Virus record (IMG/VR): IMGVR_UViG_3300034072_000758
Span: 186,001-250,000 of that record
DNA: 64,000 nt
Reading direction: 5' to 3' (one strand)
In this document: positions 20,972 through 46,965 of the stretch, piece after piece
Layout: each line of letters opens with the position of its first letter
Numbering within the stretch: position 1 is the stretch's first letter
Notes under the pieces: generated by a model
Databases searched by the model: none
Told to the model about the DNA's origin: nothing
What the model saw: the letters and a program-made list of their open reading frames with translations, nothing else
Translations under genes and position numbers: made by a program

Positions 20972-20975
20972 TATC

Positions 20976-27604: not shown

Positions 27605-27623
27605 GAAATCCTCCTGAGAGAGG

Positions 27624-27652
27624 ACAATAATTCACTATCGTCAGCAAGTCAA
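27624..27652 (-). promoter_or_regulatory. sigma70-like early promoter
   Basis: TTGACT-N17-TATTGT followed by a CAGGAGG RBS. Confidence 0.7.
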
Positions 27653-28337: not shown

Positions 28338-28354
28338 ACAATGTCTCTACCAGA

Positions 28355-29109: not shown

Positions 29110-29144
29110 AGGGTGTCTCTAAATATTGATTTCCTGACATTGTA

Positions 29145-29173
29145 ATGTTATCATCCACACCAAGAGGTGTCAA
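29145..29173 (-). promoter_or_regulatory. sigma70-like early promoter
   Basis: TTGACA-N17-TAACAT. Confidence 0.7.
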
Positions 29174-29895
29174 TCATGCGAATTATTTCAAATTATAGAG
29201 ACTACTACGATTTTCCGAACTTCGGCTACGACACCGATAATCGTATAGTTTATGAGCGTACAATCTCGGAAGAGTATATACCAAATGATCAACGCTTCTA
29301 TCCGCCCGAAACCTACAACACCGGCCCGCAGTGGCGTCAACAAGGTCTGAAAAGAAAAGACTTTCATTATGTTGGGGAAGATGAATCCACCGCTCCTAAG
29401 TTTGGCTTCCGTCATTATCTGAGACCACACTTCTTATTCATCTGCGACAAGTGTTATGTCGTATATATATACGATAAAAGCCAGATCGTTGAAGCTTACG
29501 ATCATAACAAGGCTACGGTTATGCGTCCGGTCAAGATACCCACTACCTTCAATGCGTTTGAAGCGACTATCGCTTATCATAAGCAAAGTCATTGGCATTC
29601 ATCCGACATTAGTGCTCGGTTAATCGAAAATATGCCGCCGCTGAACAGCGAGCTTGGCTCCCCGGTCATTTTGGTGAAGGGCGGGCAAAAAGATGATGAC
29701 ACCATGACGATTATCAAGAATCCATCCTTGATGGCGCTGGGTTTCAATCTTATGTCTATCGAAGAGATTTATCAGGAGATCGAAACATTTGTCGGAAAGT
29801 CCAAGGATATTCCGGCTCCGGTTGTTCCAGATAAGGAAAAGGTTGAGGCCAAGGGTTTCGATAAGAAGACCAGCTTTAGGAACCCGGTGAAATGA
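29167..29895 (+). CDS. hypothetical phage protein
   Basis: MRIISNYRDYYD start (ATG probably at 29176); C-term DKEKVEAKGFDKKTSFR. Confidence 0.75.
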   Translation: MSIMRIISNYRDYYDFPNFGYDTDNRIVYERTISEEYIPNDQRFYPPETYNTGPQWRQQGLKRKDFHYVGEDESTAPKFGFRHYLRPHFLFICDKCYVVYIYDKSQIVEAYDHNKATVMRPVKIPTTFNAFEATIAYHKQSHWHSSDISARLIENMPPLNSELGSPVILVKGGQKDDDTMTIIKNPSLMALGFNLMSIEEIYQEIETFVGKSKDIPAPVVPDKEKVEAKGFDKKTSFRNPVK

Positions 29896-29925
29896 TAAAG
29901 GCGGGATTTCTCCCGCCTTCGTTTA
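29896..29925. terminator. bidirectional terminator hairpin
   Basis: AAGGCGGGA/TCCCGCCTT between convergent genes. Confidence 0.75.
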
Positions 29926-30675
29926 TTACATTTTCAGGTTCTTACCGTACTCACGAAGCGTTTTCAAAATGTGAGCACGTGTGCGCTCATTGTCCGGCCA
30001 GTCATGATCTTTCAATTGTTGATCGATCTTCGTGGTTTCTTCCGCCGTCTCTGGATAGACGCGGCGTGTCGCCAAATCGAACTCCATGATCAGTTCTGGA
30101 TTGGTGTGTGGTGCCAGAGCCTTATTGGCTTCTTCCATTACCTTCTCAGATACTTCGGCGCGATCCCCAGCGTGATTTACTGCTACCAAGATGTTCTTCA
30201 TCTTCTTGGCTTCTTCGGACATTTTGTCTTCTTTAGTTTCAACCTTGACCGGCTTATCAGTTTTCTGGAAGAAGTAGTCATCATCAATTGTCAGATCATC
30301 ATCGGAGCCGCGTACCTGCTTCTTGATTTTTTCCAAGTATTCCTCTGCCTTGTCCGGTGGTAAATTCCCAACGTCAACATGATATACTCTTCTTTCCGGG
30401 GCTTTCTTGATACGGTCGATAACGGTTGCGTCATCAGACTTCTTCCCGTGACCGCTCACGAAACGATTAAGTTCATCGGCTTGCTCTACAATTTGTGCGA
30501 TTGTTGGGTATACCGGGGCTTCCTTTAGACCATAATCATATATTCGATCAGTATCGGTCATGAAACAGCCATTTTGGCGGAGGAAGCGATTGTTTAATTC
30601 GTGGTAGTTGCCTTCCAACGATCTTTGCGCCACTGAGATCAACTCAAGACGGATTTCGAATGGTGATTTACTCAT
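29926..30675 (-). CDS. T4-like late hypothetical protein fused to a portal-like fragment
   Basis: N-term SKSPFEIRLEL..YPTIAQIVEQADELNRFVS; internal KAPERRVYHVDVGNLPPDKAEEYL resembles T4-like gp20. Confidence 0.7.
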   Translation of the reverse strand: MSKSPFEIRLELISVAQRSLEGNYHELNNRFLRQNGCFMTDTDRIYDYGLKEAPVYPTIAQIVEQADELNRFVSGHGKKSDDATVIDRIKKAPERRVYHVDVGNLPPDKAEEYLEKIKKQVRGSDDDLTIDDDYFFQKTDKPVKVETKEDKMSEEAKKMKNILVAVNHAGDRAEVSEKVMEEANKALAPHTNPELIMEFDLATRRVYPETAEETTKIDQQLKDHDWPDNERTRAHILKTLREYGKNLKM

Positions 30676-30730
30676 TCTCTTATTTCCTTTTTTTAATAGT
30701 GTGTTTTGTGTGTTGGGTTAAAACCCACTA

Positions 30731-30738
30731 TTATTTAG
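30731..30738 (-). promoter_or_regulatory. T4-like late promoter core
   Basis: TAAATA on the minus strand upstream of 30675. Confidence 0.5.
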
Positions 30739-30748
30739 TATTGATATG

Positions 30749-30776
30749 TTGACAGGCCGATTTATTATGATAATTT
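30749..30776 (+). promoter_or_regulatory. sigma70-like early promoter
   Basis: TTGACA then a TGATAAT-type -10; AGGAG RBS before 30805. Confidence 0.6.
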
Positions 30777-30804
30777 AAAACAAACACTATATAGGAGATA
30801 TAAT

Positions 30805-31125
30805 ATGAGCCGCCAATATTATCCCAAGGGTTCTGTTCAAACCATCGAAGAATTTCTGAACAGCTTTGATGAATACGCAGCGAACGGCGAAGCAGTTCTG
30901 TTTATCGCCAATGGATCGACCGGGGAAATATCCACACTCTTCATTGACAGTTCTATGATCGTAGTTCATGATGACGGCGAATACATTCTCGGTAATTTCT
31001 TGTTCCCGATCCTGAATCTGGCGGAATACAACATCGGTCGCTTCACCGACGAAAGCACTTTCATGTTCCACAACATGCTTCACGCCAAGCAATTTCTGAC
31101 CCAGAAAGTGTCGGGTGTCTATTGA
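30805..31125 (+). CDS. hypothetical protein
   Basis: AGGAG RBS. Confidence 0.75.
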   Translation: MSRQYYPKGSVQTIEEFLNSFDEYAANGEAVLFIANGSTGEISTLFIDSSMIVVHDDGEYILGNFLFPILNLAEYNIGRFTDESTFMFHNMLHAKQFLTQKVSGVY

Positions 31126-31421
31126 TCACCTTCTCCCCTCAGTATCGTCACGACTGTAACCGATGCCGGTTCCTTGGCCATGTCAAGACGCTGTATTGTG
31201 AGTTTGACATGTACATCTGTAACCCGTCTCTGATCGCCCGTCTGAGTGACGAAGAGGGTGATTATCATTCGGGTGATCCCGCAATACTGGCGTCTAACTA
31301 TGACCGCCAGAAGCCGTCTTTTGACCAGAAAAACCCTTTGACCATCGCCTACCATCTTCACAAACAGATGGAAACCGTACTTCCATTATTCGTGCCGGGG
31401 TTCAATGGCTCTCTTCAATAA
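31122..31421 (+). CDS. hypothetical protein with an HDCxxC motif
   Basis: YRHDCNRCRFLG. Confidence 0.7.
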   Translation: MITFSPQYRHDCNRCRFLGHVKTLYCEFDMYICNPSLIARLSDEEGDYHSGDPAILASNYDRQKPSFDQKNPLTIAYHLHKQMETVLPLFVPGFNGSLQ

Positions 31422-31941
31422 CACCAAGGACATCGCCGCATTTCTGAATAAGAGCATCATTCCCGATGTGTCACAGGCGCGCATCACGCAGTTATATAAG
31501 GATGAGATCACGTGGAAATCGGCGGGTTACACAAATATATATCGGCATCTACCGTATAAGGTAGAAGCTTTGTATGGTGGTAAATTTGTGTTCACCCTCA
31601 CTATGCAAAAATCCAACCTGAGACAGGTCGGTAATCTCGGCCACAGTCGAAAAGTTTCCTATGGTATGGCAGCTTTGTCGGCGGAAGTTTTCATTTCTAC
31701 CATCATTATCGAAACCCCTGAATTTAAGGAAACGGTTGAGTTCCTGATCTCCGGGGATTATGATTACGATGTGCCACAGAAAGCTAAAAAGCATCTGATC
31801 AAGATTACACCAATGTACAGCCCCATTATCGGCGCGTGGTGTGTTAGTGGTAATGCTCACCTAATGTCTCACGAGTTCATCCCTCTCGCCAGTGAGCAAG
31901 AGATCGATGAAAAACTTATCATAATGAAGTTGGCCGTATGA
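31405..31941 (+). CDS. CT-motif family protein
   Basis: Ends ASEQEIDEKLIIMKLAV. Confidence 0.8.
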   Translation: MALFNNTKDIAAFLNKSIIPDVSQARITQLYKDEITWKSAGYTNIYRHLPYKVEALYGGKFVFTLTMQKSNLRQVGNLGHSRKVSYGMAALSAEVFISTIIIETPEFKETVEFLISGDYDYDVPQKAKKHLIKITPMYSPIIGAWCVSGNAHLMSHEFIPLASEQEIDEKLIIMKLAV

Positions 31942-32453
31942 AAAAGCTCCCAGCAGACAGTCTCGTTTTCCTGTTCGATAACTGGAAATGGTTTCTCGAA
32001 AACAGCACTCAGCTTTGCGCCGCACCCGACTACGGGCGTCATACGCGCACAGTGGGCTACACCTATAGAACCAAGACACACAGCCTTCTCAGTACGCTGG
32101 TAATCACCCATCAAAACGTCATAGAGAACATCAACGACATTCTGGGTAACCCGGTCGTCAAAGTTACGATCCTGTTCCAACTGTCCGAGGCTGGTCTTAA
32201 GCGCCATCCTGATAAAGGCTATCTGTATTCAGAAGAGTTCATAGTGTTCCGTTACGATCTGTCTGGATGCTTCGACACATCCAAGCCAATGATCGATGTT
32301 ATTGGTGCTCTCAATGACGGCGGGACATACGCAATCCCCATGAACCACCCTTCGCCCGAATATCTTCATAAGACAACCGATGTCTTTGAAATGAAATGGA
32401 GCGAGGATGTTCTGGTCGATTTCATCATGAACCAAAAGTTAACTAAAAATTGA
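31938..32453 (+). CDS. CT-motif family protein
   Basis: Ends WSEDVLVDFIMNQKLTKN. Confidence 0.8.
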   Translation: MKKLPADSLVFLFDNWKWFLENSTQLCAAPDYGRHTRTVGYTYRTKTHSLLSTLVITHQNVIENINDILGNPVVKVTILFQLSEAGLKRHPDKGYLYSEEFIVFRYDLSGCFDTSKPMIDVIGALNDGGTYAIPMNHPSPEYLHKTTDVFEMKWSEDVLVDFIMNQKLTKN

Positions 32454-32485
32454 TTGCTGAGATACCAGTGTGATATACTTTCTGT

Positions 32486-32794
32486 ATGTCATACTTTCAT
32501 TTCAACAATCTCACCCCGGCTGAAAACGAACGCTTGTCCATGCTCATAGAAGAGTTCTGTGAGGCCGGTCAGATTATCGGTAAGATCGGGCGGCACGGAT
32601 ACGAAAGCTATAATCCGTATGATGCTGAACCGGAAACTAATCGCCAGCTTCTTCGCAAAGAAGTTCTTGACGCTTTAGGCGTAATCGCTTTAATGGTCGA
32701 GCGTGGTGATATGGCTGCGTTTTCCGATGAAGAAATCCAAGCCTCCAAGGTCAAACGCGCCTCAAGGTTCACTCACCACCAAAACGAAGAATAA
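32486..32794 (+). CDS. MazG-like nucleotide pyrophosphohydrolase
   Basis: ERLSMLIEEFCEAGQIIGK..RKEVLD (EExxE...EvxD pattern). Confidence 0.7.
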   Translation: MSYFHFNNLTPAENERLSMLIEEFCEAGQIIGKIGRHGYESYNPYDAEPETNRQLLRKEVLDALGVIALMVERGDMAAFSDEEIQASKVKRASRFTHHQNEE

Positions 32795-33195
32795 TGCTCA
32801 CCTACGAAAATGTCATAGACTTACTCGATCATCTTCCGCTTACGAAGCACGAAGGCGAACATGGGTTGTTCTATTATGATTTTATTGATGACGATCTGGC
32901 ATTCGAATCGCATTTCCTCTTTACTAACAAGTCACGAACCGGAATGCAACTCACTTTCGCTTATAGAGGGTTAATGATCCACGGGCGCATAAGTATTTTA
33001 GGCACCGTGAATATAATTAACGTTTCGGCTGAAACCCTGAGCGCGTTCCCAAACAAGTTAATATCGGTCGGTGGGAACGACTATATAGTCAGTCATCCCA
33101 AGAATTTCTGGATCAACATTCAACGTGAGAATGTTCAAGAGGATGAAGTAGACGAACGTTTGATCTCTCTGATGATAAAGTATGGCTCGTGCTAG
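32794..33195 (+). CDS. CT-motif family small protein
   Basis: Ends VQEDEVDERLISLMIKYGSC. Confidence 0.85.
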   Translation: MLTYENVIDLLDHLPLTKHEGEHGLFYYDFIDDDLAFESHFLFTNKSRTGMQLTFAYRGLMIHGRISILGTVNIINVSAETLSAFPNKLISVGGNDYIVSHPKNFWINIQRENVQEDEVDERLISLMIKYGSC

Positions 33196-33572
33196 ACTTC
33201 CAGACCGTATGTAAAATTCTTCATGGCAAACCATACAAGACAAGTATGTCGAGGGACGACGAAATGACATTTCGTCACGATGACCTGAGCATACATGTTA
33301 CCTATCGCGTTTCGATTGGTGGAATGGAAACGATAGGTATTTTCTACGATATAAAATTCCGCGATGTATTTTTCCACGGGCTGATCGCCGAAGCTCCGCT
33401 ATTTCACGAAACCGATGTTCGATATAAAAAAACTAAAGTGACCAAGCTCGCTATAGGTAATCATGACGCATACCCGGTAATAGAAAAAGGATTCTGGTGC
33501 GAAGTCAATCCAGCACTTACACAGGAAGAGGTTGACGAACTGGCGACGGTCATGCTACTTCTGTATTCATGA
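33189..33572 (+). CDS. CT-motif family small protein
   Basis: Ends LTQEEVDELATVMLLLYS. Confidence 0.85.
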   Translation: MLDFQTVCKILHGKPYKTSMSRDDEMTFRHDDLSIHVTYRVSIGGMETIGIFYDIKFRDVFFHGLIAEAPLFHETDVRYKKTKVTKLAIGNHDAYPVIEKGFWCEVNPALTQEEVDELATVMLLLYS

Positions 33573-33904
33573 CATTATCATTTGATACCATTTGTTCTAT
33601 TTTAGACCGAACCGAATTTCATAATAAGAAGTCGAGTATAGGTGGGTTTTTAGTTTCATATGATTGTAAAAGTCTTAACGATCTCTATGTAAAAATCTCA
33701 ACACCTAACACCATCATAAAAATAGAAATGACGTATTCTAAGATTTCACTATATACAGGTGTATGGCGCAAAATAACTTTAGATTATGTGCCAATTATTT
33801 TATATAATCACGATGATTGTGAAGCAAAAGTCCACATAGAAAGTGATCTTCCGCAAGATGAACTTGAGGAAGAAATTTTACTGCTAATTATGAATTATGT
33901 GTAA
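33569..33904 (+). CDS. CT-motif family small protein
   Basis: Ends LPQDELEEEILLLIMNYV. Confidence 0.85.
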   Translation: MTLSFDTICSILDRTEFHNKKSSIGGFLVSYDCKSLNDLYVKISTPNTIIKIEMTYSKISLYTGVWRKITLDYVPIILYNHDDCEAKVHIESDLPQDELEEEILLLIMNYV

Positions 33905-34826
33905 ACAGCGGACCTTGGATGAAAATCTTGCTGTCTTCCTTGTACAACCCTTTATTCATCTGAGCCATCACATCCGGGGTCATATGGCGTCCTCGAACTT
34001 CACGCTTCTGACCATGACCGATGATGTGAACCTCTACAGGAATATCCCCGTAAAGCCTCTTGATGGCGCGCATACGGTTGCGACCTTCATGACCGACAAC
34101 ATGACCTTGTTTTGAGTAATCACCATCAGACCATTCGTCTGGGAATGCTACGAGAAGGAACGGTGCGCCAATAGCTTCACCATCCTCAAGCTTCTTCTCG
34201 ATCTCATAGCTCGTATCGAAACCCCCGGAGAGAGCCAATTCGAGAAAGACACTAGGCTTCATCTTTACACGAATGCCTCGATAATCGATATTGGCATTAT
34301 AGCCGGTTGCGCCAAGTCCATAAACATTATCGTATGTGAGGTCTTCTTCGAGCATATTGACAACTTTGACTTGACGAGCGGGATAGAATGGAACGTACAC
34401 AGTCCCCGGATTATGATTTGTATCATCATAAACCGAAAGCCCATCAAAACCTTTACTGATCAGTAATTTCTTGAATTGGTCGTTATCCGAGACGTAATCA
34501 GCCAAAGATGTGTAGGCATCTTCACTAGCTTCATAATAATCATCAAAGTCTTTTCCGGTCAATTCATTGTATGCCGAAACCAAATCATCTTCTTCGGCTG
34601 GGCGTTCTATTTTCAAATAAGCACAATATATTTTATCGCCAAATTCCTGAGCGGTTCTCTTATTCCCGGTCCACCAACCAGATGCGAATTGATCTATGTT
34701 TTTTCCTGTACCATGATAGCAGAGAAGAGGTTCTTCATTATGATCTACTATTTGACTATTTCCAAACCATGACTTGATGTCATTACCTATGATCTCATCC
34801 AGTTTCATATGATTTTCCAATAGCAT
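33888..34826 (-). CDS. ADP-ribosyltransferase-like (polyvalent-protein type) domain plus ParB-like domain; putative head-internal protein
   Basis: WFGNSQIVD..PLLCYHGT..AYLKIERP..FDGL; linker MLEED; GHEGRNRMRAI; late promoter upstream. Confidence 0.7.
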   Translation of the reverse strand: MLLENHMKLDEIIGNDIKSWFGNSQIVDHNEEPLLCYHGTGKNIDQFASGWWTGNKRTAQEFGDKIYCAYLKIERPAEEDDLVSAYNELTGKDFDDYYEASEDAYTSLADYVSDNDQFKKLLISKGFDGLSVYDDTNHNPGTVYVPFYPARQVKVVNMLEEDLTYDNVYGLGATGYNANIDYRGIRVKMKPSVFLELALSGGFDTSYEIEKKLEDGEAIGAPFLLVAFPDEWSDGDYSKQGHVVGHEGRNRMRAIKRLYGDIPVEVHIIGHGQKREVRGRHMTPDVMAQMNKGLYKEDSKIFIQGPLFTHNS

Positions 34827-34844
34827 TTCAGACAGTTGATAAAC

Positions 34845-34852
34845 TATTTATA
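34845..34852 (-). promoter_or_regulatory. T4-type late promoter
   Basis: Exact TATAAATA on the minus strand. Confidence 0.7.
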
Positions 34853-34869
34853 GTTTATTACCATGAATA

Positions 34870-35440
34870 GTCTTTATCCCCCCACAGTAAGAATACCAGA
34901 ATTTAGGCGCAATTCGCCTATTGTCCGTTTTCTCACTGTAGGGGGATTAGATTACCACTCGGTATAACAATTACGAGGCTGACATGAGGCTTACATGTCG
35001 GATCAAGCGGACTCCCGGTCTCTTGATCGCAACCATCGCTAATCCATGAACATCTGAGAGTAATACACATTGAAGTGAGAAAGGGTTGTTCGACGCAGTG
35101 AGGATAGCTTTCGCCAGTGTCTTTTTCGTCAAGTCCCAATCCTTACAATCAGCGCAGAAGTCGGTTAGGAAGTTAATTTCCAGCAACGCCATCAAATCTT
35201 GTTATTTCGTCTGACCAGATAGCGTTCGGCCATTACGCAATTACTCAGCGCTGGCCGTCTTTTTATGATCCGTTCATATTCTTTCGAATATCGGTGGAAC
35301 CGTGTCAGGGTGGGGTCTTCCCTGTCGATAGCCGTTCGACTGATCTGTCTCATGCGGTGGGTCATGTTCCCCACACAACGTTTCGCCCCGATGTCAAGGG
35401 CATATACATCTGATCAATGGTCACTTGCCACAGTGATACC
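34870..35440 (-). ncRNA. candidate structured non-coding RNA
   Basis: Stem 34877-34893/34930-34946 with an inner hairpin; hairpins 34981-34999, 35001-35028 and 35227-35257; ATATTC-GAAA-GAATAT tetraloop on the minus strand at 35276-35291. Confidence 0.4.
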
Positions 35441-35455
35441 CAAGTATATTTTGAA

Positions 35456-36181
35456 TCAAATTAAAGAGTCAATTTTTAGATTCCTATATTCGGATAGGTT
35501 ATTATACGCTCGTTGTTTCTTTGTTCGTCCATAATTTCTCCAATATTCGAGAAATTCCTCTTCATTTTTGAATATAGGTGTTCCTGATCGAAAATCATTT
35601 ATTGATCCTGTTATACTACCTATATTGGTGGTGTTACCACTACCGGCCTTATCACCGGATATTTCCCATTTTTCTCTGACAAATATTTCTATATTATTGT
35701 ATGGTAGTTCTATATAAGATATATCGTCGGTGCGCCAGCAACATTCGGTATTTACATCGACTCGATTATAAACAAATCCTACTACCAAATGAGATACATA
35801 CTCATTAAAAGGATACAATATATTTTTATTTGGAGTTTTTTCATTCATAAAGCTAGTATAGCTACCTAATGTATATGAAAATTTATCCTTGTTATTTCGT
35901 CTATAGGTAGTCTTTATATCGATTGCTATATGTTTTTTATCTTTGTGGAAGAATGTGAAATCTGGATATTGATTTTGTGTTTCGGCATCTTTGAATATGT
36001 AGTTATAGTCACCTGCTATTTCTTTCAACGTTTCTCGCGTTACCAATTCAAATACAGTTGAAAGCACTTTAGTATCTGTGCCAAGAGGTATTACTGTTCC
36101 ATTTTTTGCGACGAAGCCGCAAATGTTGTAATCGCTTAATCGTTCATTTATGCGGATGGTCAAGTCATGTATTAATGTCAT
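35456..36181 (-). CDS. type II restriction endonuclease, EcoRV family
   Basis: Collinear with EcoRV: PLGTDTKVLSTVFEL, QNQYPDFT, IAIDIKTTY, TLGSYTSF, AGSGNTTNIGSI, EFLEYWRNY. Confidence 0.95.
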   Translation of the reverse strand: MTLIHDLTIRINERLSDYNICGFVAKNGTVIPLGTDTKVLSTVFELVTRETLKEIAGDYNYIFKDAETQNQYPDFTFFHKDKKHIAIDIKTTYRRNNKDKFSYTLGSYTSFMNEKTPNKNILYPFNEYVSHLVVGFVYNRVDVNTECCWRTDDISYIELPYNNIEIFVREKWEISGDKAGSGNTTNIGSITGSINDFRSGTPIFKNEEEFLEYWRNYGRTKKQRAYNNLSEYRNLKIDSLI

Positions 36182-36224
36182 TACTAATATTAATACATGA
36201 TTAAGTATTTTATCAATTTAATAT

Positions 36225-36839
36225 TTAATGAGCCTCGAAATAGCTCTTTATTTGTTCCTTGCTCCAAACAATGTAGAAATTGTGTTCAGGAACAATTACA
36301 CCATCGTAAGCAGTGAACTTCAAACAATTCTTCAAAAACAAAGCTGTATCGTCTCTGTAGAAATCATTACCCAACATATTCAGACCACGCAAATAGCTTT
36401 GACCAACATAACCTTTGATAGCGGCAGTAATGACCTTTTGCTTACCCTCGTATTCCCAATCACCAAAGTTCCAGAGAGTATCTTCCAAGTCCGGCGCATT
36501 CATGATCAGCTTGGTGATAACTGCGACCGGAAGGTTTTTATTGGTATCGCCTCGATCATCAACAATAAGGGGTTTCTTTATAGACAAGAAAGACGGACGA
36601 ACGTTGCCGCTATCATTTTCACCCCCGGTGTACCCACCAGCAGCATCGGGGTCACCCGCGAAATAAATCCCCGCACCATACATGTCGTTACCGGTCCCCA
36701 GCTTATTGTCATCGAAGTCGTGGAACGAATGAGGGGTGCCGTGGAAAACCATCAACGGTGCGCCGTTCTTATCTACGACCTTCGATCCTTTAAACCAAGT
36801 ATCAAACTCATTGGAATATAATTCAAACAATCTCATCAA
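36225..36839 (-). CDS. ADP-ribosyltransferase-like (polyvalent-protein type) protein
   Basis: MRLFEL start; WFKGSKVVDKNGAPLMVFHGT..YGAGIYF..FLSIKKP..YDGVI. Confidence 0.75.
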   Translation of the reverse strand: MMRLFELYSNEFDTWFKGSKVVDKNGAPLMVFHGTPHSFHDFDDNKLGTGNDMYGAGIYFAGDPDAAGGYTGGENDSGNVRPSFLSIKKPLIVDDRGDTNKNLPVAVITKLIMNAPDLEDTLWNFGDWEYEGKQKVITAAIKGYVGQSYLRGLNMLGNDFYRDDTALFLKNCLKFTAYDGVIVPEHNFYIVWSKEQIKSYFEAH

Positions 36840-37528
36840 TCTATCCAGTGATCGTGCTTTGGCATGTTAGGTAATTTTGGGTTGATTTCGTCCGCCTTCT
36901 TTATAGCGATCTCTTTGGATGTGTAAACACCCACGACCACACCTTTGTCCAGCACATACCAATCTCTACCGATATTGACGATACGTGTTCTATTCCATCC
37001 GCTCGGAGAAGAATACGAGCGATCCAATTCATTTTCTTTTTCGAGAGCCTTCTTTTCAGCTTCTTCTCTCGTTTTATACGAATTGAAGTGTATGCCATAG
37101 ATGAACATGGCATACGGAAGATCGCGCCCCGGAAAATGGACGACTTCGATTAAGTGGCGAAGGAAGCGCTTTTTAGGCTTGAATTGAATAACCTGAGCAT
37201 CTTCGTTGAACAGGTCCAGTTGTGTGTCTGGACCACGATGTTTCTTGTAGGCGTCTAAACGTTCCTGAGCATTAACACGTCTTACCCATCGATCTTGTGT
37301 GTTTCGCGCGGCATCCGATTTGGCATCAAGCTCATCTTGAAGCTCGCGCATCTTAGCCAGCGCAGCTTTTTTCTGAGAAGGTGTGCCACGATCTCTCTGA
37401 TGAACCAGTGGCTTCCAATGACTATCATACCAAGAATCCCATTCATCTTGGGCTTGGTCGGCAGCTTTCTTCAAGTCCTCAACAGACGGCTTAGTGGATT
37501 CAAGTAATGGAATAATTCTGAAACGCAT
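36836..37528 (-). CDS. putative head-internal late protein
   Basis: MRFRIIPLLES start; ATAAATA 4 nt upstream of the ATG. Confidence 0.7.
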   Translation of the reverse strand: MRFRIIPLLESTKPSVEDLKKAADQAQDEWDSWYDSHWKPLVHQRDRGTPSQKKAALAKMRELQDELDAKSDAARNTQDRWVRRVNAQERLDAYKKHRGPDTQLDLFNEDAQVIQFKPKKRFLRHLIEVVHFPGRDLPYAMFIYGIHFNSYKTREEAEKKALEKENELDRSYSSPSGWNRTRIVNIGRDWYVLDKGVVVGVYTSKEIAIKKADEINPKLPNMPKHDHWID

Positions 37529-37532
37529 GATG

Positions 37533-37540
37533 TATTTATT
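37533..37540 (-). promoter_or_regulatory. T4-type late promoter
   Basis: AATAAATA-catc-ATG. Confidence 0.65.
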
Positions 37541-39596
37541 TCGCTAAAGACTTAAGGGTGGCCGCATATCCATCGAGCGCCGGGTCAACTTCTTCCTCGT
37601 CTTCCTGCCGATCTCTATCAATATTTTTCATTAACTCTGAAAGGAACTTTGGATCAATATAGAATGGTATATTGAATTTATCGGCATAGGCTTTTGTGTC
37701 AATGATGATTTCGATGACTTTCTTATATGAAATAATTTGACGCCATTGATCACCACGAATTTCGATCTTTTTCACGTAACGATTGAAATTTTTTATGTCG
37801 CCTATGACGAACTCTTCGGACCACGTGAATGATCGTCCGTGTCGATCACCGCGTATGTCTGGGACCATAGCACCCTCTGGGCGGTCTCGATTAGCAAAGA
37901 CACGTTCTCCATCGACCGGGATTATTTTGTGTCTCTGGGCCAACTTGGTGTGATCCATAGTCAAGAGGATAATTGAACCATGATCCAGACGTGGATTTCT
38001 AGTGAAGCTGTTCCCTTTCACGTTTCCTAAACCGGGAATGTTGTGAACCCAACGTGCTTCCATTGTGTTGTTGGAAAAGGTCGCTTCGCCTTTGTGGCTG
38101 TCCATAAAATGATAGAGAGGATAGTCACGACCTTCGGTCAGGGATTCGGTTACAGGCTCGTTCAGGTACATATGAACGGCTTTCACGAACTCCCGCGCGG
38201 CCTTTTTGAAATTGAACATCCCAACTTTGTTGCGTATTTTTTCGAAGAATACCGCTGGGCTGAATTTAAGGTCGAATGCCCCCCATTCGATGATCGTTGG
38301 CTTACCGATACCCAGATATGCTTTGATGGCCGCTGAGAACTCTTCCTTGCGCCTTGTTGCGATCCTCTTGGCAGCTTTTTCATCACCAAACTTCGAAAGG
38401 AAGATATGAGCGTGGGAAATAATCATCGGATAGAACTCTACGTTCTGATTATGGTACTCGTCATCTGTGTCAATTTGTCTAGCATCCTTATCGGCATACT
38501 GTAAATATTGAACAGCGTGAGCCAACTCGTGTTCAATCGTACCACGGAGATTTCTTATTCCTCTGTTGAATACACTCGTAATGTAGTTCGTAATATGACC
38601 CGGCTTATAAAGAATAGAGTCAGTATCGATTGCCCCTTCGTTGAGATCGAATATGTTACTCAGAACAAGATGTATTGTTTTAGTTTTAATGATGTATTGT
38701 CCGCGATAAGTATTCTTCTTTTCTCGATCAACAGTCATCACTAACGTAATTGGATGACCGTTTATTTCTCCGATGTCAGAGTTCTCCCAAAAACCATATG
38801 CGGGTGGGGTGTGGGACAGATCGACATTGGTAATTTTGTATAAGTTGAGAATTTTAGAAAGCTCTTGACGGAAATTGTCGGTTGTCCCTTTGGCTTTATA
38901 CGCTTTGGCGGTCAATATTGAATTGACGTATTCGATATATGATCTAACAGCATAAAGCTCAATGTTCTTCATCAAGTTCTTTGGAACCTTGATGACACCT
39001 TCCGATACGTATTTCTTTGGACGATAAACATAAGACATTCCCCCGGTCTTCTCTAACCAAGGGAACTTACCGAAGAATTTGTCGTTGACAACCTTGTAGA
39101 CTTCGATGCCGATACCTTTTTCGTCGGCAATTTCTTTCAGGAGGTTCATGATCTTTGAACCAAGTCCTGACCCAGCATCCTTTACAAGGATTTCAGATAG
39201 GCCGATCTTATCTTTCAAAAAGGTAGCGTCTAGGAATACGCGCCAGCCATCCCCGCCTAGAATATACCCATCGCCTGAGAAGATCATTTGCGACGTTTCC
39301 CAATCTGGCTCTTTAGCCTGTTTGGAAAAAGTCGCCCCCAATTTATCACGCAAAATCGACGCCAGATACGGTACTAAAAAATGTTGTGGTGGTTTTCCAT
39401 CTTTCTCTTTCCACATATTCCAGATGCGCTCAACACGCTGATAAGTGGCTGTCCCCGGCGTTGATACATGATCAGCAAAGTCCTGTGCGGAAGAGAAACG
39501 CGGGGCCATATCAAAAAGATCATGAGCATCGATACCCGATCTCTTGTAACGAGGCAAAAGGTCTTCTAAGGATTCGGTAAGCTCACTATAACGCAT
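37536..39596 (-). CDS. multidomain polyvalent protein (GNAT-like, zincin HExxH, C-terminal ART-like module)
   Basis: MRYSELTES start; GSGLGSKIM; EHELAHAVQ; YVSEG and LTESLTEG junctions; GRDYPLYH module shared with 39618-40277. Confidence 0.75.
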   Translation of the reverse strand: MRYSELTESLEDLLPRYKRSGIDAHDLFDMAPRFSSAQDFADHVSTPGTATYQRVERIWNMWKEKDGKPPQHFLVPYLASILRDKLGATFSKQAKEPDWETSQMIFSGDGYILGGDGWRVFLDATFLKDKIGLSEILVKDAGSGLGSKIMNLLKEIADEKGIGIEVYKVVNDKFFGKFPWLEKTGGMSYVYRPKKYVSEGVIKVPKNLMKNIELYAVRSYIEYVNSILTAKAYKAKGTTDNFRQELSKILNLYKITNVDLSHTPPAYGFWENSDIGEINGHPITLVMTVDREKKNTYRGQYIIKTKTIHLVLSNIFDLNEGAIDTDSILYKPGHITNYITSVFNRGIRNLRGTIEHELAHAVQYLQYADKDARQIDTDDEYHNQNVEFYPMIISHAHIFLSKFGDEKAAKRIATRRKEEFSAAIKAYLGIGKPTIIEWGAFDLKFSPAVFFEKIRNKVGMFNFKKAAREFVKAVHMYLNEPVTESLTEGRDYPLYHFMDSHKGEATFSNNTMEARWVHNIPGLGNVKGNSFTRNPRLDHGSIILLTMDHTKLAQRHKIIPVDGERVFANRDRPEGAMVPDIRGDRHGRSFTWSEEFVIGDIKNFNRYVKKIEIRGDQWRQIISYKKVIEIIIDTKAYADKFNIPFYIDPKFLSELMKNIDRDRQEDEEEVDPALDGYAATLKSLAK

Positions 39597-39600
39597 CCTT

Positions 39601-39612
39601 TATTTATAAATA
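39601..39612. promoter_or_regulatory. palindromic bidirectional T4-type late promoter
   Basis: TATTTATAAATA gives TATAAATA on both strands, 4-5 nt from the divergent ATGs. Confidence 0.8.
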
Positions 39613-39617
39613 TTGAA

Positions 39618-40277
39618 ATGGATACTTGGGATGAAAGACTTAAAGCTCTGAACGAAGCATTGCTGAACGAAGGACGTGATGCGCCTTTGTTCCATTGGAC
39701 AAGGGAACAATCGTTATTCAATATAATATCAAGTGATTATTTGACGGCTAATCCTAGTAATGTTCCGATGGGCGTTAGCACTTCACGAAATCTGAATACT
39801 ATATTTTTTAACAATAGATTCGCGGTTCTTATTCTTAACCAGTCAAAGTTGGCTCAACGATATAAAATAGTACCTTTATACGGTGATAGCCCGGTTCAGA
39901 TGCGCGCCAATGAGCAAGAGGAACGCATCATTACCGCAAAATTGGATGATGTTCATAAGTACATCACCGCAATTGGTATTGACAGCAGCGTCTTAGCCTA
40001 TGGTTCTAAAGAATTAAGTGATGTTGTGAGTGATAGCTGGCAACTGGTCGGTGTGATGCTTCTGGCAGCATACGCGACCAAGCACCATATCCCCATCGTA
40101 GACAAGAAGTCTATCAGCAAGAATGGCGCTTGGTCTAAAGACATAACGGCAGAAATCAAAGCAGTAGCTAAGAAAATCAAAGCCGTGTGGGACGCAGAAG
40201 AACCGGAAGATCGCACGAGCAATCTTCTGTCAAACTTTAATTATCAGAAGGATATTCTTAGTCCTTCGGATAAGTAA
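39618..40277 (+). CDS. putative head-internal protein, paralogue of the C-terminal module of 37536-39596
   Basis: LLNEGRDAPLFH..STSRN..LNQSKLAQRYKIVP..EQEERI. Confidence 0.75.
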   Translation: MDTWDERLKALNEALLNEGRDAPLFHWTREQSLFNIISSDYLTANPSNVPMGVSTSRNLNTIFFNNRFAVLILNQSKLAQRYKIVPLYGDSPVQMRANEQEERIITAKLDDVHKYITAIGIDSSVLAYGSKELSDVVSDSWQLVGVMLLAAYATKHHIPIVDKKSISKNGAWSKDITAEIKAVAKKIKAVWDAEEPEDRTSNLLSNFNYQKDILSPSDK

Positions 40278-40563
40278 ATCCGAAACCATCGTCGCCCCAG
40301 AACTTCGCATAGAAGTCCCACTGAGCCTTGTCAGTCGTGTCAAGAACCACGACCTTTTCGGTTTCGGCACGAAGAGTCGTGTTGGTCGAAATCATGGCCA
40401 TGTTGCTGGCCTTGTCGCCGCGAATCTCAGCGTAACGATGATTGCCGCCGCGTTCAGCCATACCACGCAGCGCTGCTTGCGCGTCACAGGACGCCCTATC
40501 CAGAATGATGATGTTAAGACCCGGTTTGTTCAGGTCAACGGTAAGATAGTGAAAACCGCTCAT
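40258..40563 (-). CDS. hypothetical protein
   Basis: AGGAG RBS and a promoter upstream. Confidence 0.75.
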   Translation of the reverse strand: MSGFHYLTVDLNKPGLNIIILDRASCDAQAALRGMAERGGNHRYAEIRGDKASNMAMISTNTTLRAETEKVVVLDTTDKAQWDFYAKFWGDDGFGFTYPKD

Positions 40564-40590
40564 ATTTTGTCTCCTATACAGTTTGAGACA

Positions 40591-40618
40591 AGAGTACCAC
40601 GAACAAAGTAATTGTCAA
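40591..40618 (-). promoter_or_regulatory. sigma70-like early promoter
   Basis: TTGACA-N16-TACTCT. Confidence 0.65.
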
Positions 40619-40619
40619 G

Positions 40620-41102
40620 CTACTTTGCGATATACATTTTAAGCCACATCAATTCATCTTCAATATCTGTGAACCGGCCAGTAACACGGAAATCATCTTC
40701 GTCGGCAATGACGCACAATATATGATCTTCACCCGTGGCATCCTTACAAATGAGTAGGTGTTTAATCCGCTCATGGCGTGAATACCATGAATGAAAAGTT
40801 AAGAATATCTTATATTCAAAAGACTTGCTTTTGAAAAGCAATATGGCCTTACTGGTATAGGAAGCATCCTGAACCAGTTTGAACTTATATGTTGTGCCGA
40901 AAATTTCCAACACTCGTTCGCTATGCTGAACACGAACCTTACCATGCTTGGTATCATGGCGGTAAAATTGAGTGTACTTCACTTCCCCGGCGCGCTGATA
41001 CAAATCGAGAATGACATCCATCTTGATGCCATGCTTTTCCAACTTATCTTTGATTTGAAAGTTGTGAGCGTTTGGATTCTTGATCTTCTTTGGCTTTTTC
41101 AT
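40620..41102 (-). CDS. CT-motif family protein
   Basis: Ends RFTDIEDELMWLKMYIAK. Confidence 0.8.
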   Translation of the reverse strand: MKKPKKIKNPNAHNFQIKDKLEKHGIKMDVILDLYQRAGEVKYTQFYRHDTKHGKVRVQHSERVLEIFGTTYKFKLVQDASYTSKAILLFKSKSFEYKIFLTFHSWYSRHERIKHLLICKDATGEDHILCVIADEDDFRVTGRFTDIEDELMWLKMYIAK

Positions 41103-41476
41103 AGGATAGCCATTTTGATAAGTAACTCGTCCTTGATCTGTTCTTCTAAATCATCTTCGACCGTGACTAACAAAGATTCGTAAGGCATGAACTCCGCATC
41201 ACGATCAACATTATCACCAACCACGTCATAGAAGACACGATAAGCATAGCTTGTGTGCTCTGTCTTATACCATACGAAGACGGACAGGTATACTATCCTA
41301 CTGTTTTCTGCGGGTTCATCCGCTATGGTATATTCGATGTCGAAATTAGGCGTAGTGACCGTGAACCCAAAAAGATTTAATTCATCTTTCTTGGTGAATG
41401 TTGGGCTATTCGATAAGGAATTAAACCAACGCCGTTTCCGAAACACTTCATTATAAAGATATTCTTCGAACGTCAT
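41099..41476 (-). CDS. CT-motif family small protein
   Basis: Ends DLEEQIKDELLIKMAIL. Confidence 0.8.
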   Translation of the reverse strand: MTFEEYLYNEVFRKRRWFNSLSNSPTFTKKDELNLFGFTVTTPNFDIEYTIADEPAENSRIVYLSVFVWYKTEHTSYAYRVFYDVVGDNVDRDAEFMPYESLLVTVEDDLEEQIKDELLIKMAIL

Positions 41477-41856
41477 GCCACATACAACGTAAGAATCATC
41501 TTCGCATCCGAAAGCGCTTCGCTATTAAAAGTGTTCTCTACCGCCATGTAATCGATGTAACCAAGACAATCTTGGATGAAGGCGGTATCTTTGGTGAAAT
41601 AGTATTTGGACCGATAGACCATATTCTCTTTGAACAGAGAGATTTCAAAGTGAATGATCTTAAACCCGCGCCGTTTGATAGTCACGATCATAGACAGATC
41701 GGCGTCTGAGAATTTAGAGGTGCTGGACCATTCCGCACCGGGGCCTCGGCTTCGTGCTGCGTCATTCACATCAGACGAGTTTTCCATCTTCTTCGCCATA
41801 TCTAAAGCGATGAAGGTATCGAGCAAAAAATAAGAAAAGGTTGATGAATAATTCAT
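41473..41856 (-). CDS. CT-motif family small protein
   Basis: Ends FNSEALSDAKMILTLYVA. Confidence 0.8.
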   Translation of the reverse strand: MNYSSTFSYFLLDTFIALDMAKKMENSSDVNDAARSRGPGAEWSSTSKFSDADLSMIVTIKRRGFKIIHFEISLFKENMVYRSKYYFTKDTAFIQDCLGYIDYMAVENTFNSEALSDAKMILTLYVA

Positions 41857-42173
41857 TGCCCGAATATGACGATGTTCGTGATAAGGTCTTCCAGAATGTC
41901 TATATCATACTCATAATGAAAATCAACCGCTTTACCACGTAAACCCATGAACATTGTCGGTGGAGAAATTTCATAGGTAATGTAGGCTTTACCATGTGAC
42001 GAATGTATAATCACACAAGTGTATCCATGACCTTTGCTTCTGAGTTCAAGACTAGCGTTTATCTGCGGGAGTTCTAACGTTCCTATTGGATCGGTTATTG
42101 GCCCTGATCTATCAATTGTAAACAGATCAAGATTTTCTCTCACATATTCATAAAGGACTTCTGGGATTGCCAT
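41853..42173 (-). CDS. CT-motif family small protein
   Basis: Ends YDIDILEDLITNIVIFGQ. Confidence 0.8.
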   Translation of the reverse strand: MAIPEVLYEYVRENLDLFTIDRSGPITDPIGTLELPQINASLELRSKGHGYTCVIIHSSHGKAYITYEISPPTMFMGLRGKAVDFHYEYDIDILEDLITNIVIFGQ

Positions 42174-42271
42174 GACTAATAGTTAAACATAGTCCACATA
42201 ATTATGTCAAATACCATCTTGCGTCCCCTCAGACTTTGTTGTAGGGTCGTCAACTAAACCCATGAGGAACC

Positions 42272-43378
42272 ATGACTCCCGAATATCCCGAAGGCTTGAT
42301 TGAAGAGGCTATCGTCCACTTGCTGAACCGCAAGGGCGACAAGCTGTATGGTATCAAAAACCCTACGGACAAGATGATCATGGTCTCCCTGAATGGTAGC
42401 AAGGGGGCGTCGATCAAGCATGTCGAAACTCCGAAGCCGGAACATGCGGTCGAGGCTGTCAGACTCAATTTCGATAACATCAAGCTGATTTACAATTTCT
42501 CAGAAGAGACCAAAGAGGCGTTGCTTTATGAATGGCCGTCGAAGGTCATTCAAGAGCTTGGTGAGCGCGCGTTTACGACAGCGCAATTGGAACGTGCCAT
42601 CAAAATCAATCACGAATGTATCGAGCACATCCATGATGCTTCGGAAGAACTTCAACTGCTGGCACTTAAGTGTAGCCAATATGCTTGGACGAAGTTCCGC
42701 CCTAAAAATGTGACGATCAACGTGAAGCTGGAAATCTTTGCGCGCAATCGCTATGATGCGCTCGAAGAAACTCTTCAAAGACTGCGCACGAACAACGATC
42801 ATTACATCAGCCGTCGCCAGATGCTCGATGTTGATTGTCAGTACGGCGAGCAAATTATGCGTGGCGATAGCCAGTATAAGATGATTCGCTTCATCACGAA
42901 CCCGACTGTTAAACAACAATTGGCGTTCGCTGAACGTTTCTTGAAATACTTGAAGCATGAGCGTCACGACATTTCGAATGTTCGTAAGTTCATTAAAGCT
43001 CGTGCTCTGTGTCTGGAAGTCGCTCAAATGGTCCTTGCTGATTTTCCGCGCGCCTTTGATGATACCGAGTATCTTTCGGCCACCGCCGAAGATATACAAA
43101 TAGCCCGTATTCGAATTTCGCCCTCCGTGATTTCGTATGTGAAGTCACCATCTGAGAAGCTGGTGCGCATCGCGGCTGAGGTCGGTGGTATTAATGCTCT
43201 GATCAGCGTTAATCCAAAATGTATCCCAAGTGATCTTGTGGAAAAGTATTATCTTGATGTTGACGCAAAACTTGCTAGAAAGTTCTATCTAGCGACGGAT
43301 GACGATGACATCAAAATGCATTTGGCTGTCAAGTACAGCATCAAACCTCCCAAAGCGCGCAAAGGAGTCCCAGCGTGA
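42272..43378 (+). CDS. helical repeat protein (DUF4116-like) with CT-motif tail
   Basis: IKNPTDKM, IHDASEELQLLAL, ITNPTVKQQLA, VKSPSEKL; TDDDDIKMHLAVKYS near the end. Confidence 0.75.
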   Translation: MTPEYPEGLIEEAIVHLLNRKGDKLYGIKNPTDKMIMVSLNGSKGASIKHVETPKPEHAVEAVRLNFDNIKLIYNFSEETKEALLYEWPSKVIQELGERAFTTAQLERAIKINHECIEHIHDASEELQLLALKCSQYAWTKFRPKNVTINVKLEIFARNRYDALEETLQRLRTNNDHYISRRQMLDVDCQYGEQIMRGDSQYKMIRFITNPTVKQQLAFAERFLKYLKHERHDISNVRKFIKARALCLEVAQMVLADFPRAFDDTEYLSATAEDIQIARIRISPSVISYVKSPSEKLVRIAAEVGGINALISVNPKCIPSDLVEKYYLDVDAKLARKFYLATDDDDIKMHLAVKYSIKPPKARKGVPA

Positions 43379-45723: not shown

Positions 45724-45727
45724 GAAT

Positions 45728-45756
45728 GAAGGCCGGGAATACCCCGGCCTTCTTTT
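45728..45756 (+). terminator. intrinsic terminator
   Basis: GAAGGCCGGG/CCCGGCCTTC followed by TTTT. Confidence 0.8.
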
Positions 45757-45765
45757 GGGTTTATT

Positions 45766-46796: not shown

Positions 46797-46807
46797 GGAA
46801 TAAAGTA

Positions 46808-46963: not shown

Positions 46964-46965
46964 AA

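What the first reader, a model, noticed from the sequence alone, without database searches (positions are those of the whole stretch)
35456..36181. Orphan EcoRV-family endonuclease and apparent absence of GATATC from the window
Seen: a full-length EcoRV homologue retaining the PD..DIK catalytic motif and the GSGNTTNIG recognition loop. It has no adjacent Dam-type (DPPY) methylase; the only MTase in the window is an NPPF-type enzyme 11 kb away. My manual scan of every ATATC occurrence found no GATATC, whereas about 15-20 would be expected in 64 kb at an eyeballed 43-46% GC; near-misses such as GATATT, GATATG and AATATC are abundant. The gene is AT-rich and sits inside the late head-protein cluster. 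Inference: the phage has purged the site and uses an active REase against host DNA or co-infecting elements, possibly late-expressed or packaged in the virion.
Basis: partly seen in the sequence, partly recalled or inferred. Interest (0 to 1): 0.8.

Follow-up and report, generated by a model that had tools for sequence, protein, structure and literature searches.

The report
Lone EcoRV nuclease in site-free phage
A 517-kb uncultured phage carries an intact EcoRV-type DNA-cutting enzyme with no protective methylase, and is safe from it because its own genome has been swept clean of the GATATC target (and of 28 other restriction sites), so the enzyme can only cut other DNA such as the host's or a rival phage's.

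Summary
ORF 35456-36181 (-) is a full-length EcoRV orthologue (E 2e-67 to the crystal-structure sequence; model TM 0.91). It keeps every catalytic and recognition residue. GATATC occurs 0 times in the window (24 expected) and 0 times in 140.7 kb of the parent 516,805-bp contig (about 55 expected). Synonymous codon choice removes it: GAT-ATC is expected 43 times and seen 0 times.

No M.EcoRV-type methylase was found in 133 kb or by a motif scan of the whole contig. By contrast, 71 of 78 bacterial homologues have one within 4 kb.

Two corrections. First, the purge is not specific to EcoRV: 29 of 64 palindromic hexamers, plus CCWGG, RGATCY and others, are absent. Second, the gene is not in a head-protein cluster. 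It lies between two ART-PolyVal genes in an auxiliary region.

The gene is AT-rich and fast-evolving, yet it has been scrubbed of the phage's forbidden sites (P = 0.015). That argues for long residence under selection.

Best reading: a methylase-free restriction enzyme made safe by site avoidance and aimed at host or competitor DNA. Expression timing and packaging are untested.

Side finding: the 629-bp "spacer" beside the gene is a two-copy, apparently structured non-coding element.

The parts
35456..36181 (-). Solitary EcoRV-family type IIP restriction endonuclease gene (241 aa), an AT-rich island (GC 0.326)
   Evidence: full-length EcoRV homologue. It keeps 41 of 41 columns invariant in the other 119 homologues. 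Model TM 0.91 to EcoRV. PADLOC REase_II 7e-69.
36182..36224 (-). 43-bp AT-rich gap between the upstream ART gene and the endonuclease start. Contains a weak sigma-70-like match (36216-36187) and no Shine-Dalgarno core.
   Evidence: Only about 24% of the phage's genes have an SD-like core, so its absence here is not unusual.
34827..35455 (-). 629-bp non-coding element in the position where homologues carry the convergent methylase. It is not a methylase remnant. A second diverged copy lies at contig positions ~511,768-512,448. Includes a long hairpin at 34878-34945.
   Evidence: no methylase similarity; second copy; fold z -5.2; consensus fold z -7.6; 24 compensatory pairs against 13.9 +/- 3.6 in shuffles. 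No Rfam family.
36225..36839 (-). ART-PolyVal ADP-ribosyltransferase-like gene immediately upstream, same strand
   Evidence: PF18760 at E 7.8e-20. Homologues occur in jumbo Dickeya and Erwinia phages.
33888..34826 (-). Second ART-PolyVal gene (312 aa, with an unassigned C-terminal half) downstream, same strand
   Evidence: PF18760 at E 7.3e-10. N-terminal similarity to the upstream ART protein.
47002..47856 (+). The only type II DNA methyltransferase in the window. It is a gamma-class N6-adenine type, not the D12/alpha class of M.EcoRV, and its specificity is unknown.
1..64000 (.). GATATC-free genome background: 0 sites here and 0 in 140.7 kb of the contig. The same 29 palindromic hexamers are absent throughout.

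Best explanation
The gene encodes an active, GATATC-specific, EcoRV-type homodimeric endonuclease that the phage keeps without any methylase. Self-protection comes from the genome having no GATATC at all.

The site was most likely already lost as part of an extreme, genome-wide purge of restriction sites driven by host restriction systems. That purge let the phage capture a bare endonuclease ORF from a bacterial or conjugative-element EcoRV-type R-M pair. Once resident, the enzyme itself makes any new GATATC in the phage lethal, which fixes the absence.

In an infected cell the enzyme can cut only unmethylated GATATC-bearing DNA: the host chromosome, plasmids, or co-infecting phages. This gives host shut-off and nucleotide salvage, competitor exclusion, or both.

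Shown: identity, intact functional residues, fold, lack of sites, lack of a cognate methylase in the sequence read, and adaptation of the gene to the phage's site-avoidance regime.

Inferred: enzymatic activity, specificity, target, timing, and the order of events.
For: Identity and integrity:
- E 2.3e-67 to EcoRV over the full length; PF09233; model TM 0.91.
- Keeps E45, D74, D88/K90, Q69-N70 and the identical GSGNTTNIGS loop.
- Keeps 41 of 41 columns invariant in the other 119 homologues and 65 of 68 columns conserved at 95% or more. The only changes are conservative: Y31I, E65D, V164I.

Site absence by selection:
- 0 GATATC in 132,868 contiguous bp (34-52 expected) and 0 in a further 7.8 kb from the far end of the contig.
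- Across 158 Asp-Ile dipeptides, GAT-ATC is expected 43.4 times and seen 0 times, while GAC-ATC is seen 49 times against 26 expected.

No cognate methylase:
- tblastn and a D12-methylase profile HMM on the six-frame translation of 123 kb find nothing (best E 0.5-0.7).
- A motif scan of IMG/VR with an M.EcoRV-subfamily alignment finds 7 loci, none on this contig.

Departure from the family norm:
- 71 of 78 informative bacterial loci have the methylase within 4 kb.
- So do all 5 contexts looked at individually.

Long residence under selection:
- The gene contains 0 of 71 forbidden hexamers. Synonymous shuffles average 3.8 (P of zero = 0.015). Bacterial homologue genes carry 4 and 11.

Context:
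- The gene is flanked by ART-PolyVal genes, a domain class tied to early conflict with the host (PMC5512222).

Precedents:
- Chlorovirus endonucleases degrade host DNA, and marseillevirus R-M excludes rival viruses (PMC7253447).
- PacI is protected by site absence (PMC3488263).
Against: - No biochemical or expression data.
- The host is unknown, so it is not known whether host DNA carries unmethylated GATATC.
- Only 27% of the contig was read base by base. The whole-contig methylase test relies on two conserved peptide motifs and would miss a divergent enzyme.
- The gene has foreign composition (GC 0.326) and the longest terminal branch in the family tree (1.06 against a median of 0.16). That is also compatible with relaxed constraint.
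- GATATC is only one of 29 purged palindromes, so its absence needs no link to the enzyme.
- No close relatives of the phage exist in the databases, so the order of events cannot be reconstructed.
Confidence: 0.6

Rival explanations
1. Tolerated passenger. The endonuclease ORF was picked up by chance and persists only because it is harmless in a site-free genome. It gives the phage no benefit and may be on the way to decay.
For: AT-rich island confined to the ORF. Longest branch in the family tree. Unique among 2.9 million IMG/VR contigs and 50,697 phage records as a methylase-less copy.
Against: All invariant residues are retained despite the long branch. The gene has been cleared of the phage's forbidden hexamers (P = 0.015), which takes time under selection. 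The ORF is intact and tightly packed behind the upstream gene.
Confidence: 0.17
2. Split R-M system. A cognate methyltransferase exists elsewhere on the 517-kb genome, or the gamma-class enzyme at 47002-47856 is the partner, and the pair works as an ordinary phage-borne R-M system.
For: 73% of the contig was not read. Separated R-M systems are documented in bacteria (PMC3488263). A type II methyltransferase of unknown specificity lies 10.8 kb away.
Against: With no GATATC in the phage DNA there is nothing for a partner to protect. No D12 homologue was found in 133 kb, and none on the contig by motif scan. The nearby methyltransferase belongs to a different class from every partner seen in 71 bacterial loci.
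Confidence: 0.07
3. Selfish, homing-like element. The endonuclease cuts GATATC-bearing genomes of related phages during co-infection and spreads itself and its flanks through recombinational repair, as free-standing homing endonucleases of T4-type phages do.
For: AT-rich free-standing nuclease ORF inserted between two paralogous genes. The phage lacks the target site.
Against: No relatives of the phage are known, with or without the gene. EcoRV cuts thousands of sites rather than one homing site. There is no empty-site allele: the apparent assembly branch near the gene is explained by a 31-nt repeat.
Confidence: 0.08
4. Inactive or re-purposed protein, for example a GATATC-binding protein or an enzyme with changed specificity.
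For: Long branch. E65D and two other changes at highly conserved positions. No experimental data.
Against: The catalytic triad, Q-loop and recognition loop are identical to those of active EcoRV. The fold is preserved. A binding-only protein would have no sites to bind in its own genome.
Confidence: 0.06

Closest known systems
EcoRV restriction-modification system (R.EcoRV with M.EcoRV, type IIP, GAT^ATC)
   Same: The endonuclease is an orthologue: about 45-50% identity over the full length, the same catalytic residues and recognition loop, and the same fold.
   Different: The D12-class methylase partner is missing. It is convergent and adjacent in 71 of 78 bacterial loci. The carrier is a 517-kb phage rather than a plasmid, ICE or chromosome.
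PacI of Pseudomonas alcaligenes, a solitary restriction enzyme protected because the host genome lacks its site (as discussed in PMC3488263)
   Same: Methylase-free restriction enzyme. Self-protection comes from absence of the recognition site in the carrier genome.
   Different: PacI is an HNH enzyme with an 8-bp all-A/T site in a GC-rich bacterium, so the site is rare by composition. Here a 6-bp site expected about 200 times per genome has been removed by selection, and the carrier is a virus.
Chlorovirus and marseillevirus R-M systems (PMC7253447)
   Same: Virus-encoded type II endonucleases of bacterial origin, used offensively to degrade host DNA (chloroviruses, packaged in virions) or to exclude co-infecting viruses (marseilleviruses, endonuclease expressed early).
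   Different: Those viruses protect themselves with a cognate methyltransferase encoded next to the endonuclease. This phage uses site avoidance instead. Those hosts are eukaryotes.
Solitary REases catalogued in phage genomes (Oliveira et al. 2014, PMC4176335)
   Same: Belongs to this rare class: 12 solitary REases in 831 phages, about 2-fold over-represented relative to chromosomes.
   Different: That survey gave counts only. No example was tied to complete loss of the cognate site, to retention of all functional residues, or to a mechanism.
Phage nucleases that spare phage DNA by a self-mark, such as T4 EndoII/EndoIV with hydroxymethylcytosine DNA (own knowledge, not tested here)
   Same: A phage nuclease that degrades host DNA while the phage genome is intrinsically resistant.
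   Different: In T4 the discrimination rests on base modification. Here it rests on sequence content (absence of the site).

Membership tests
EcoRV endonuclease family (Pfam PF09233) | Full-length match to the family profile and to EcoRV itself | tested here: met
   PF09233 at E 2e-50, profile positions 4-239 of 244. EcoRV chains at E 2.3e-67.
EcoRV endonuclease family (Pfam PF09233) | PD-(D/E)XK catalytic residues (EcoRV E45, D74, D90, K92) | tested here: met
   E45, D74, D88 and K90 align with them and are invariant in 120 homologues.
EcoRV endonuclease family (Pfam PF09233) | Recognition (R) loop GSGNTTN and Q-loop QN that read GATATC | tested here: met
   The loop is identical to EcoRV residues 182-188. 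Q69 and N70 are kept.
EcoRV endonuclease family (Pfam PF09233) | EcoRV fold | tested here: met
   Model pLDDT 90.2. TM 0.91 and rmsd 2.1 A to 1b97. The next fold family (SwaI) scores TM 0.52.
EcoRV endonuclease family (Pfam PF09233) | Mg2+-dependent blunt cleavage at GAT^ATC by a homodimer | not testable with these tools
   Needs purified protein.
Complete type II R-M system of EcoRV type | Adjacent (usually convergent) D12-class N6-adenine methyltransferase | tested here: not met
   A 629-bp non-coding element occupies that position. No D12 similarity in 133 kb. None on the contig by motif scan.
Solitary REase protected by site absence (PacI-like situation) | No cognate methylase in the carrier genome | tested here: inconclusive
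   Met for 27% of the contig by profile search, and for the whole contig only by a two-motif scan.
Solitary REase protected by site absence (PacI-like situation) | Recognition site absent from the carrier genome | tested here: met
   0 GATATC in 140,665 bp from two distant parts of the contig, against about 55 expected. The remaining 73% was not read.
Virus-encoded offensive restriction enzyme (chlorovirus/marseillevirus type) | Degrades host or competitor DNA during infection; early expression or virion packaging | not testable with these tools
   Only contextual hints: flanking ART-PolyVal genes (PMC5512222).

The most novel reading that the evidence does not exclude
Site avoidance is used as an immunity mechanism in its own right. 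A huge phage that has erased dozens of restriction sites from its genome can arm itself with methylase-free restriction enzymes, because 'self' is simply DNA without sites. It would use them to destroy host DNA or to exclude rival phages and plasmids. The EcoRV gene would be the first recognisable member of such an arsenal, and the unread three quarters of the genome may hold more, matched to other purged sites.
Probability: 0.4. Interest if true: 0.72.

Novelty: new variant of a known kind. Interest (0 to 1): 0.57.

Why it matters
Solitary restriction endonucleases are known to be over-represented in phages (PMC4176335), but nobody has explained how a phage tolerates one or what it is for.

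This locus is a clean, testable case. The enzyme is an orthologue of one of the best-understood restriction enzymes. The carrier genome has no target sites. Both the phage's codon usage and the gene's own sequence show signs of selection.

If the enzyme is active, it shows that site avoidance does more than evade host restriction. It also lets a virus turn a restriction enzyme against its host or its competitors without paying for a methylase.

The extreme purge is also a useful data point on how far restriction pressure can shape a very large phage genome. The 29 absent palindromic hexamers would together be expected about 805 times in 133 kb.

Tried and rejected
1. Methylase remnant in the 629-bp stretch downstream of the gene. 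Rejected: sensitive tblastn with four cognate methylases and a profile HMM gave only non-collinear noise. The stretch is instead a two-copy non-coding element.
2. A variant allele lacking the gene, suggested by two Logan contigs ending at the same point 330 bp from the gene. Rejected: the break is explained by a 31-nt perfect repeat with the second copy of that element. The Logan contigs are 100% identical to the JGI contig.
3. Relatives of the phage, to order site loss against gene gain. None found: no megablast match, no tblastn match for the 782-aa protein, and no homologue of the 686-aa neighbour in 5.8 billion proteins.
4. 'The purge is a general trait of huge phages.' Rejected: of six other genomes of 469-735 kb, only LR756511 shows a comparable purge, and it keeps GATATC.
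5. ORF 12073-12951 (DPPF) and ORF 62104-62481 (NPPH) as methyltransferases. Rejected: no family match.
6. Single-sequence structure prediction of ORF 47002-47856 failed (pLDDT 34). The atlas and PADLOC results were used instead.
7. Literature search for the sample or contig identifiers found nothing.
8. A metagenome-collection scan for the junction 29-mer found nothing, not even the source contig. That collection evidently lacks this sample.

Full report
**What is there.** The window is positions 186,001-250,000 of a single 516,805-bp metagenomic contig. That contig is JGI 3300034072 Ga0310127_000012, also filed as IMGVR_UViG_3300034072_000758. Independent Logan assemblies of run SRR10854512 are 100% identical over the overlaps.

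ORF 35456-36181 on the minus strand encodes 241 residues. The evidence that it is an EcoRV orthologue:
- It aligns with EcoRV crystal-structure sequences over residues 2-234 at E 2.3e-67.
- It matches Pfam PF09233 at E 2e-50.
- It matches the PADLOC type II REase model at 7e-69.
- An AlphaFold model built on 30 homologues has mean pLDDT 90. It superposes on EcoRV at TM 0.91 and 2.1 A, and the next fold family (SwaI) reaches only TM 0.52.

Mapping through the alignment, EcoRV E45, D74, D90 and K92 correspond to E45, D74, D88 and K90. The Q-loop QN and the recognition loop GSGNTTNIGS are identical. The roles of these residues are established knowledge of EcoRV, not tested here.

Against 119 homologues, the phage protein keeps all 41 columns that are invariant in the others. 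It also keeps 65 of the 68 columns conserved at 95% or more, and the exceptions are conservative: Y31I, E65D and V164I.

**The site count.**
- GATATC is absent from the window, against 24.4 +/- 4.9 in dinucleotide-preserving shuffles and 17-29 under Markov models.
- I walked outward along the contig to 132,868 contiguous bases. The count stays at 0 against 34 (maximal-order Markov) to 52 (first-order) expected.
- A further 7.8 kb from the far end of the contig also has none.
- In all, 27% of the genome was read, with about 55 sites expected.

The loss is achieved through synonymous choices. Among 158 Asp-Ile dipeptides, GAT-ATC is expected 43.4 times and occurs 0 times, while GAC-ATC occurs 49 times against 26 expected. 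The two other reading frames add 11 expected sites and none observed. This is selection, not base composition.

**The purge is global.** GATATC is one of 29 palindromic hexamers out of 64 that are completely absent. Their summed expectation in 133 kb is about 805. The same 29 are also absent from the distant 7.8-kb sample, where 46 occurrences would be expected.

Also absent or nearly absent:
- CCWGG: 0 against 144
- RGATCY: 0 against 154
- CYCGRG: 0 against 89
- GRGCYC: 0 against 72
- CTGGAG: 0 against 40
- CTGAAG: 1 against 56
- TGCA: 45 against 529

GATC, TCGA, GGCC and CCGG sit at expectation. This selective pattern is the classical signature of restriction avoidance (PMC6286503).

It is not a general property of very large phages. 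I sampled six other genomes of 469-735 kb. Only LR756511 shows a similar purge, with 23-26 hexamers absent in each of two 50-kb samples and 17-21 of them shared with this phage. LR756511 still keeps GATATC at expectation (10 and 13 against 12). None of the six has zero GATATC. So GATATC belongs to this phage's particular avoided set, but its absence does not by itself need the endonuclease as a cause.

**Orphan status.**
- Every homologue context I inspected individually has a convergent D12-class (DPPY) methylase overlapping the 3' end of the endonuclease gene. This includes the two closest relatives, which sit on conjugative-element-like contigs.
- In a survey of species-representative genomes, 195 carry a homologue. 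Of the best 80, 71 of 78 informative loci have the methylase within 4 kb, and the seven exceptions are the most divergent members.
- In the phage, tblastn with four such methylases and a profile HMM on the six-frame translation find nothing in 103-123 kb (best E 0.5-0.7).
- A motif scan of all IMG/VR with the M.EcoRV-subfamily alignment returns seven loci, none on this contig.
- The only type II methyltransferase among the 125 window ORFs is ORF 47002-47856. It is a gamma-class N6-adenine enzyme (motif I then NPPF; PADLOC 1.4e-52; Eco57I/N6_Mtase-like by the atlas).
- Among 2.9 million IMG/VR contigs, only two others carry an EcoRV homologue by this search. Both have the methylase and normal GATATC counts.
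- Among 50,697 phage records, only a haloarchaeal virus has a distant homologue, at 29% identity.

**History of the gene.**
- The nearest homologues are only 50-54% identical and are bacterial or from conjugative elements.
- The phage copy has the longest terminal branch of 120 sequences: 1.06 against a median of 0.16.
- Its GC is 0.326, against 0.447 +/- 0.048 for the phage's genes. The low-GC island coincides with the ORF, and the flanking 629 bp has GC 0.453.
- Yet the gene contains none of the 71 hexamers that are absent from the rest of the 123 kb. Synonymous re-codings that keep its own codon usage carry 3.8 on average (P of zero = 0.015), and two bacterial homologue genes carry 4 and 11.
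- The gene has therefore been shaped by the phage's own selective regime while keeping every functional residue. This argues for long residence and function rather than a recent dead passenger.

A complete R-M pair followed by methylase loss cannot be excluded, but no remnant is visible. Acquiring an active endonuclease into a genome carrying about 200 sites would be lethal. The most parsimonious order is therefore that site loss came first (inference).

**Context.**
- Pfam and PHROG scans of all 125 ORFs find no capsid, scaffold, protease or terminase family.
- The gene lies 43 bp behind an ART-PolyVal gene (36225-36839) and upstream of a second one (33888-34826), all on the minus strand.
- The surrounding region is rich in translation and NAD/ADP-ribose genes: GluRS, ArgRS, two further aaRS, Pth2, Tpt1/KptA, an NMNAT-like protein, NADAR, NUDIX and a tRNA-Leu.
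- ART domains of the polyvalent-protein class are proposed to act early in the conflict with the host. The T4 Alt ART is packaged and injected (PMC5512222). A role in host take-over is therefore plausible.
- Packaging or late expression of the endonuclease remains speculation.

**Mechanism proposed.** The enzyme cannot act on its own genome, so it can only cut foreign, unmethylated, GATATC-bearing DNA in the infected cell. Bacterial loci around homologues carry 0.17 sites per kb, which would be hundreds of cuts per chromosome. Viral precedents exist: chlorovirus endonucleases degrade host DNA, and marseillevirus R-M excludes competitors (PMC7253447). In both, a methylase protects the virus. 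Protection by site absence is known for PacI in a bacterium (PMC3488263). Solitary REases were counted in phages (12 in 831 genomes, about 2-fold over-represented) but left unexplained (PMC4176335). This locus joins these threads, which is why I rate it a new variant of a known kind.

**Side finding.** The 629 bp downstream of the gene (34827-35455) is not junk.
- It folds well below its shuffles (z -5.2).
- It has a second, 78%-identical copy about 290 kb away, at contig positions ~511,768-512,448.
- The two copies share blocks of perfect identity separated by variable stretches. The indels are not multiples of three, so it is not coding.
- A consensus fold has 114 pairs, 24 of them kept through changes on both sides.
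- Against column-shuffled alignments, the energy is z -7.6. Compensatory pairs number 24 against 13.9 +/- 3.6, and 1 of 200 shuffles reaches 24.
- The strand is undecided, and two sequences are a thin basis.
- No Rfam family matches.
- In both loci the element lies directly 5' of a gene on the same strand.

**Limits.**
- 73% of the contig was not read.
- The host and habitat are unknown.
- No close relatives exist.
- Nothing about expression or activity is known.

Noticed in passing
window 1-64000 and contig positions 146,914-279,781 and 509,009-516,805: Extreme, selective purge of restriction sites. 29 of 64 palindromic hexamers are absent (about 805 occurrences expected in 133 kb). CCWGG, RGATCY, CYCGRG, GRGCYC and CTGGAG are at 0, and TGCA is at 9% of expectation. 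GATC, TCGA, GGCC and CCGG are normal.
   Followed up: yes
window 34827-35455 (-); second copy at L114:2760-3440 (+) = contig ~511,768-512,448: Two-copy, ~600-700-nt non-coding element with perfectly conserved blocks and compensatory helix changes (24 pairs against 13.9 +/- 3.6 in shuffles; consensus fold z -7.6). No Rfam match. In both loci it lies just 5' of a same-strand gene. Candidate structured RNA or leader.
   Followed up: partly
L018 and L112 (LR756511.1, 500,001-550,000 and 100,001-150,000): An unrelated 595-kb uncultured phage lacks 23-26 palindromic hexamers per 50 kb, 17-21 of them shared with this phage. It keeps GATATC, GAATTC, CCWGG and TGCA. Five other huge phages show little purge.
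   Followed up: partly
window 20976-22646, 51660-51742, 9036-9608; L008:2328-4043; L009:8772-10004; L020:7319-8734: Dense set of translation genes: GluRS, ArgRS, a class II aaRS (tRNA-synt_2b), a class I aaRS (tRNA-synt_1), Pth2, Tpt1/KptA and tRNA-Leu(CAA).
   Followed up: no
window 29926-30675 (-): A 249-aa ORF whose residues 81-122 match the T4 gp20 portal family (E 1e-13) and portals of cyanophages, Vibrio phage nt-1 and huge phages. It is far too short to be a portal. It may be a portal-derived module.
   Followed up: partly
window 37536-39596 (-): A 686-aa protein with no homologue other than itself among 5.8 billion proteins, and no Pfam or PHROG match. The 782-aa neighbour also has no match in phage genomes.
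   Followed up: partly
window 33888-36839; 26597-27604; L009:15920-16483; L008:4724-5209: NAD/ADP-ribose theme around the endonuclease: two ART-PolyVal genes, an NMNAT-like/phosphohydrolase fusion, NADAR, NUDIX and the NAD-dependent Tpt1.
   Followed up: no
window (ORF not located): One window ORF matches PADLOC AbiEi models (E 1e-32 and 4.5e-27). It is none of the ten ORFs tested.
   Followed up: no
L021, L024, L025, L026, L027 (IMG/VR contigs): Five viral contigs carry an M.EcoRV-subfamily methylase but were not among the contigs found with the endonuclease. This is the usual defensive orphan-methylase situation, the mirror image of this locus.
   Followed up: no
contig-wide gene starts (212 ORFs in 123 kb): Only about 24% of the genes have a Shine-Dalgarno-like core upstream, and GAGGAG is itself depleted (3 against 45). 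This hints at a host with weak SD usage, or at avoidance of a GAGGAG-type site.
   Followed up: no
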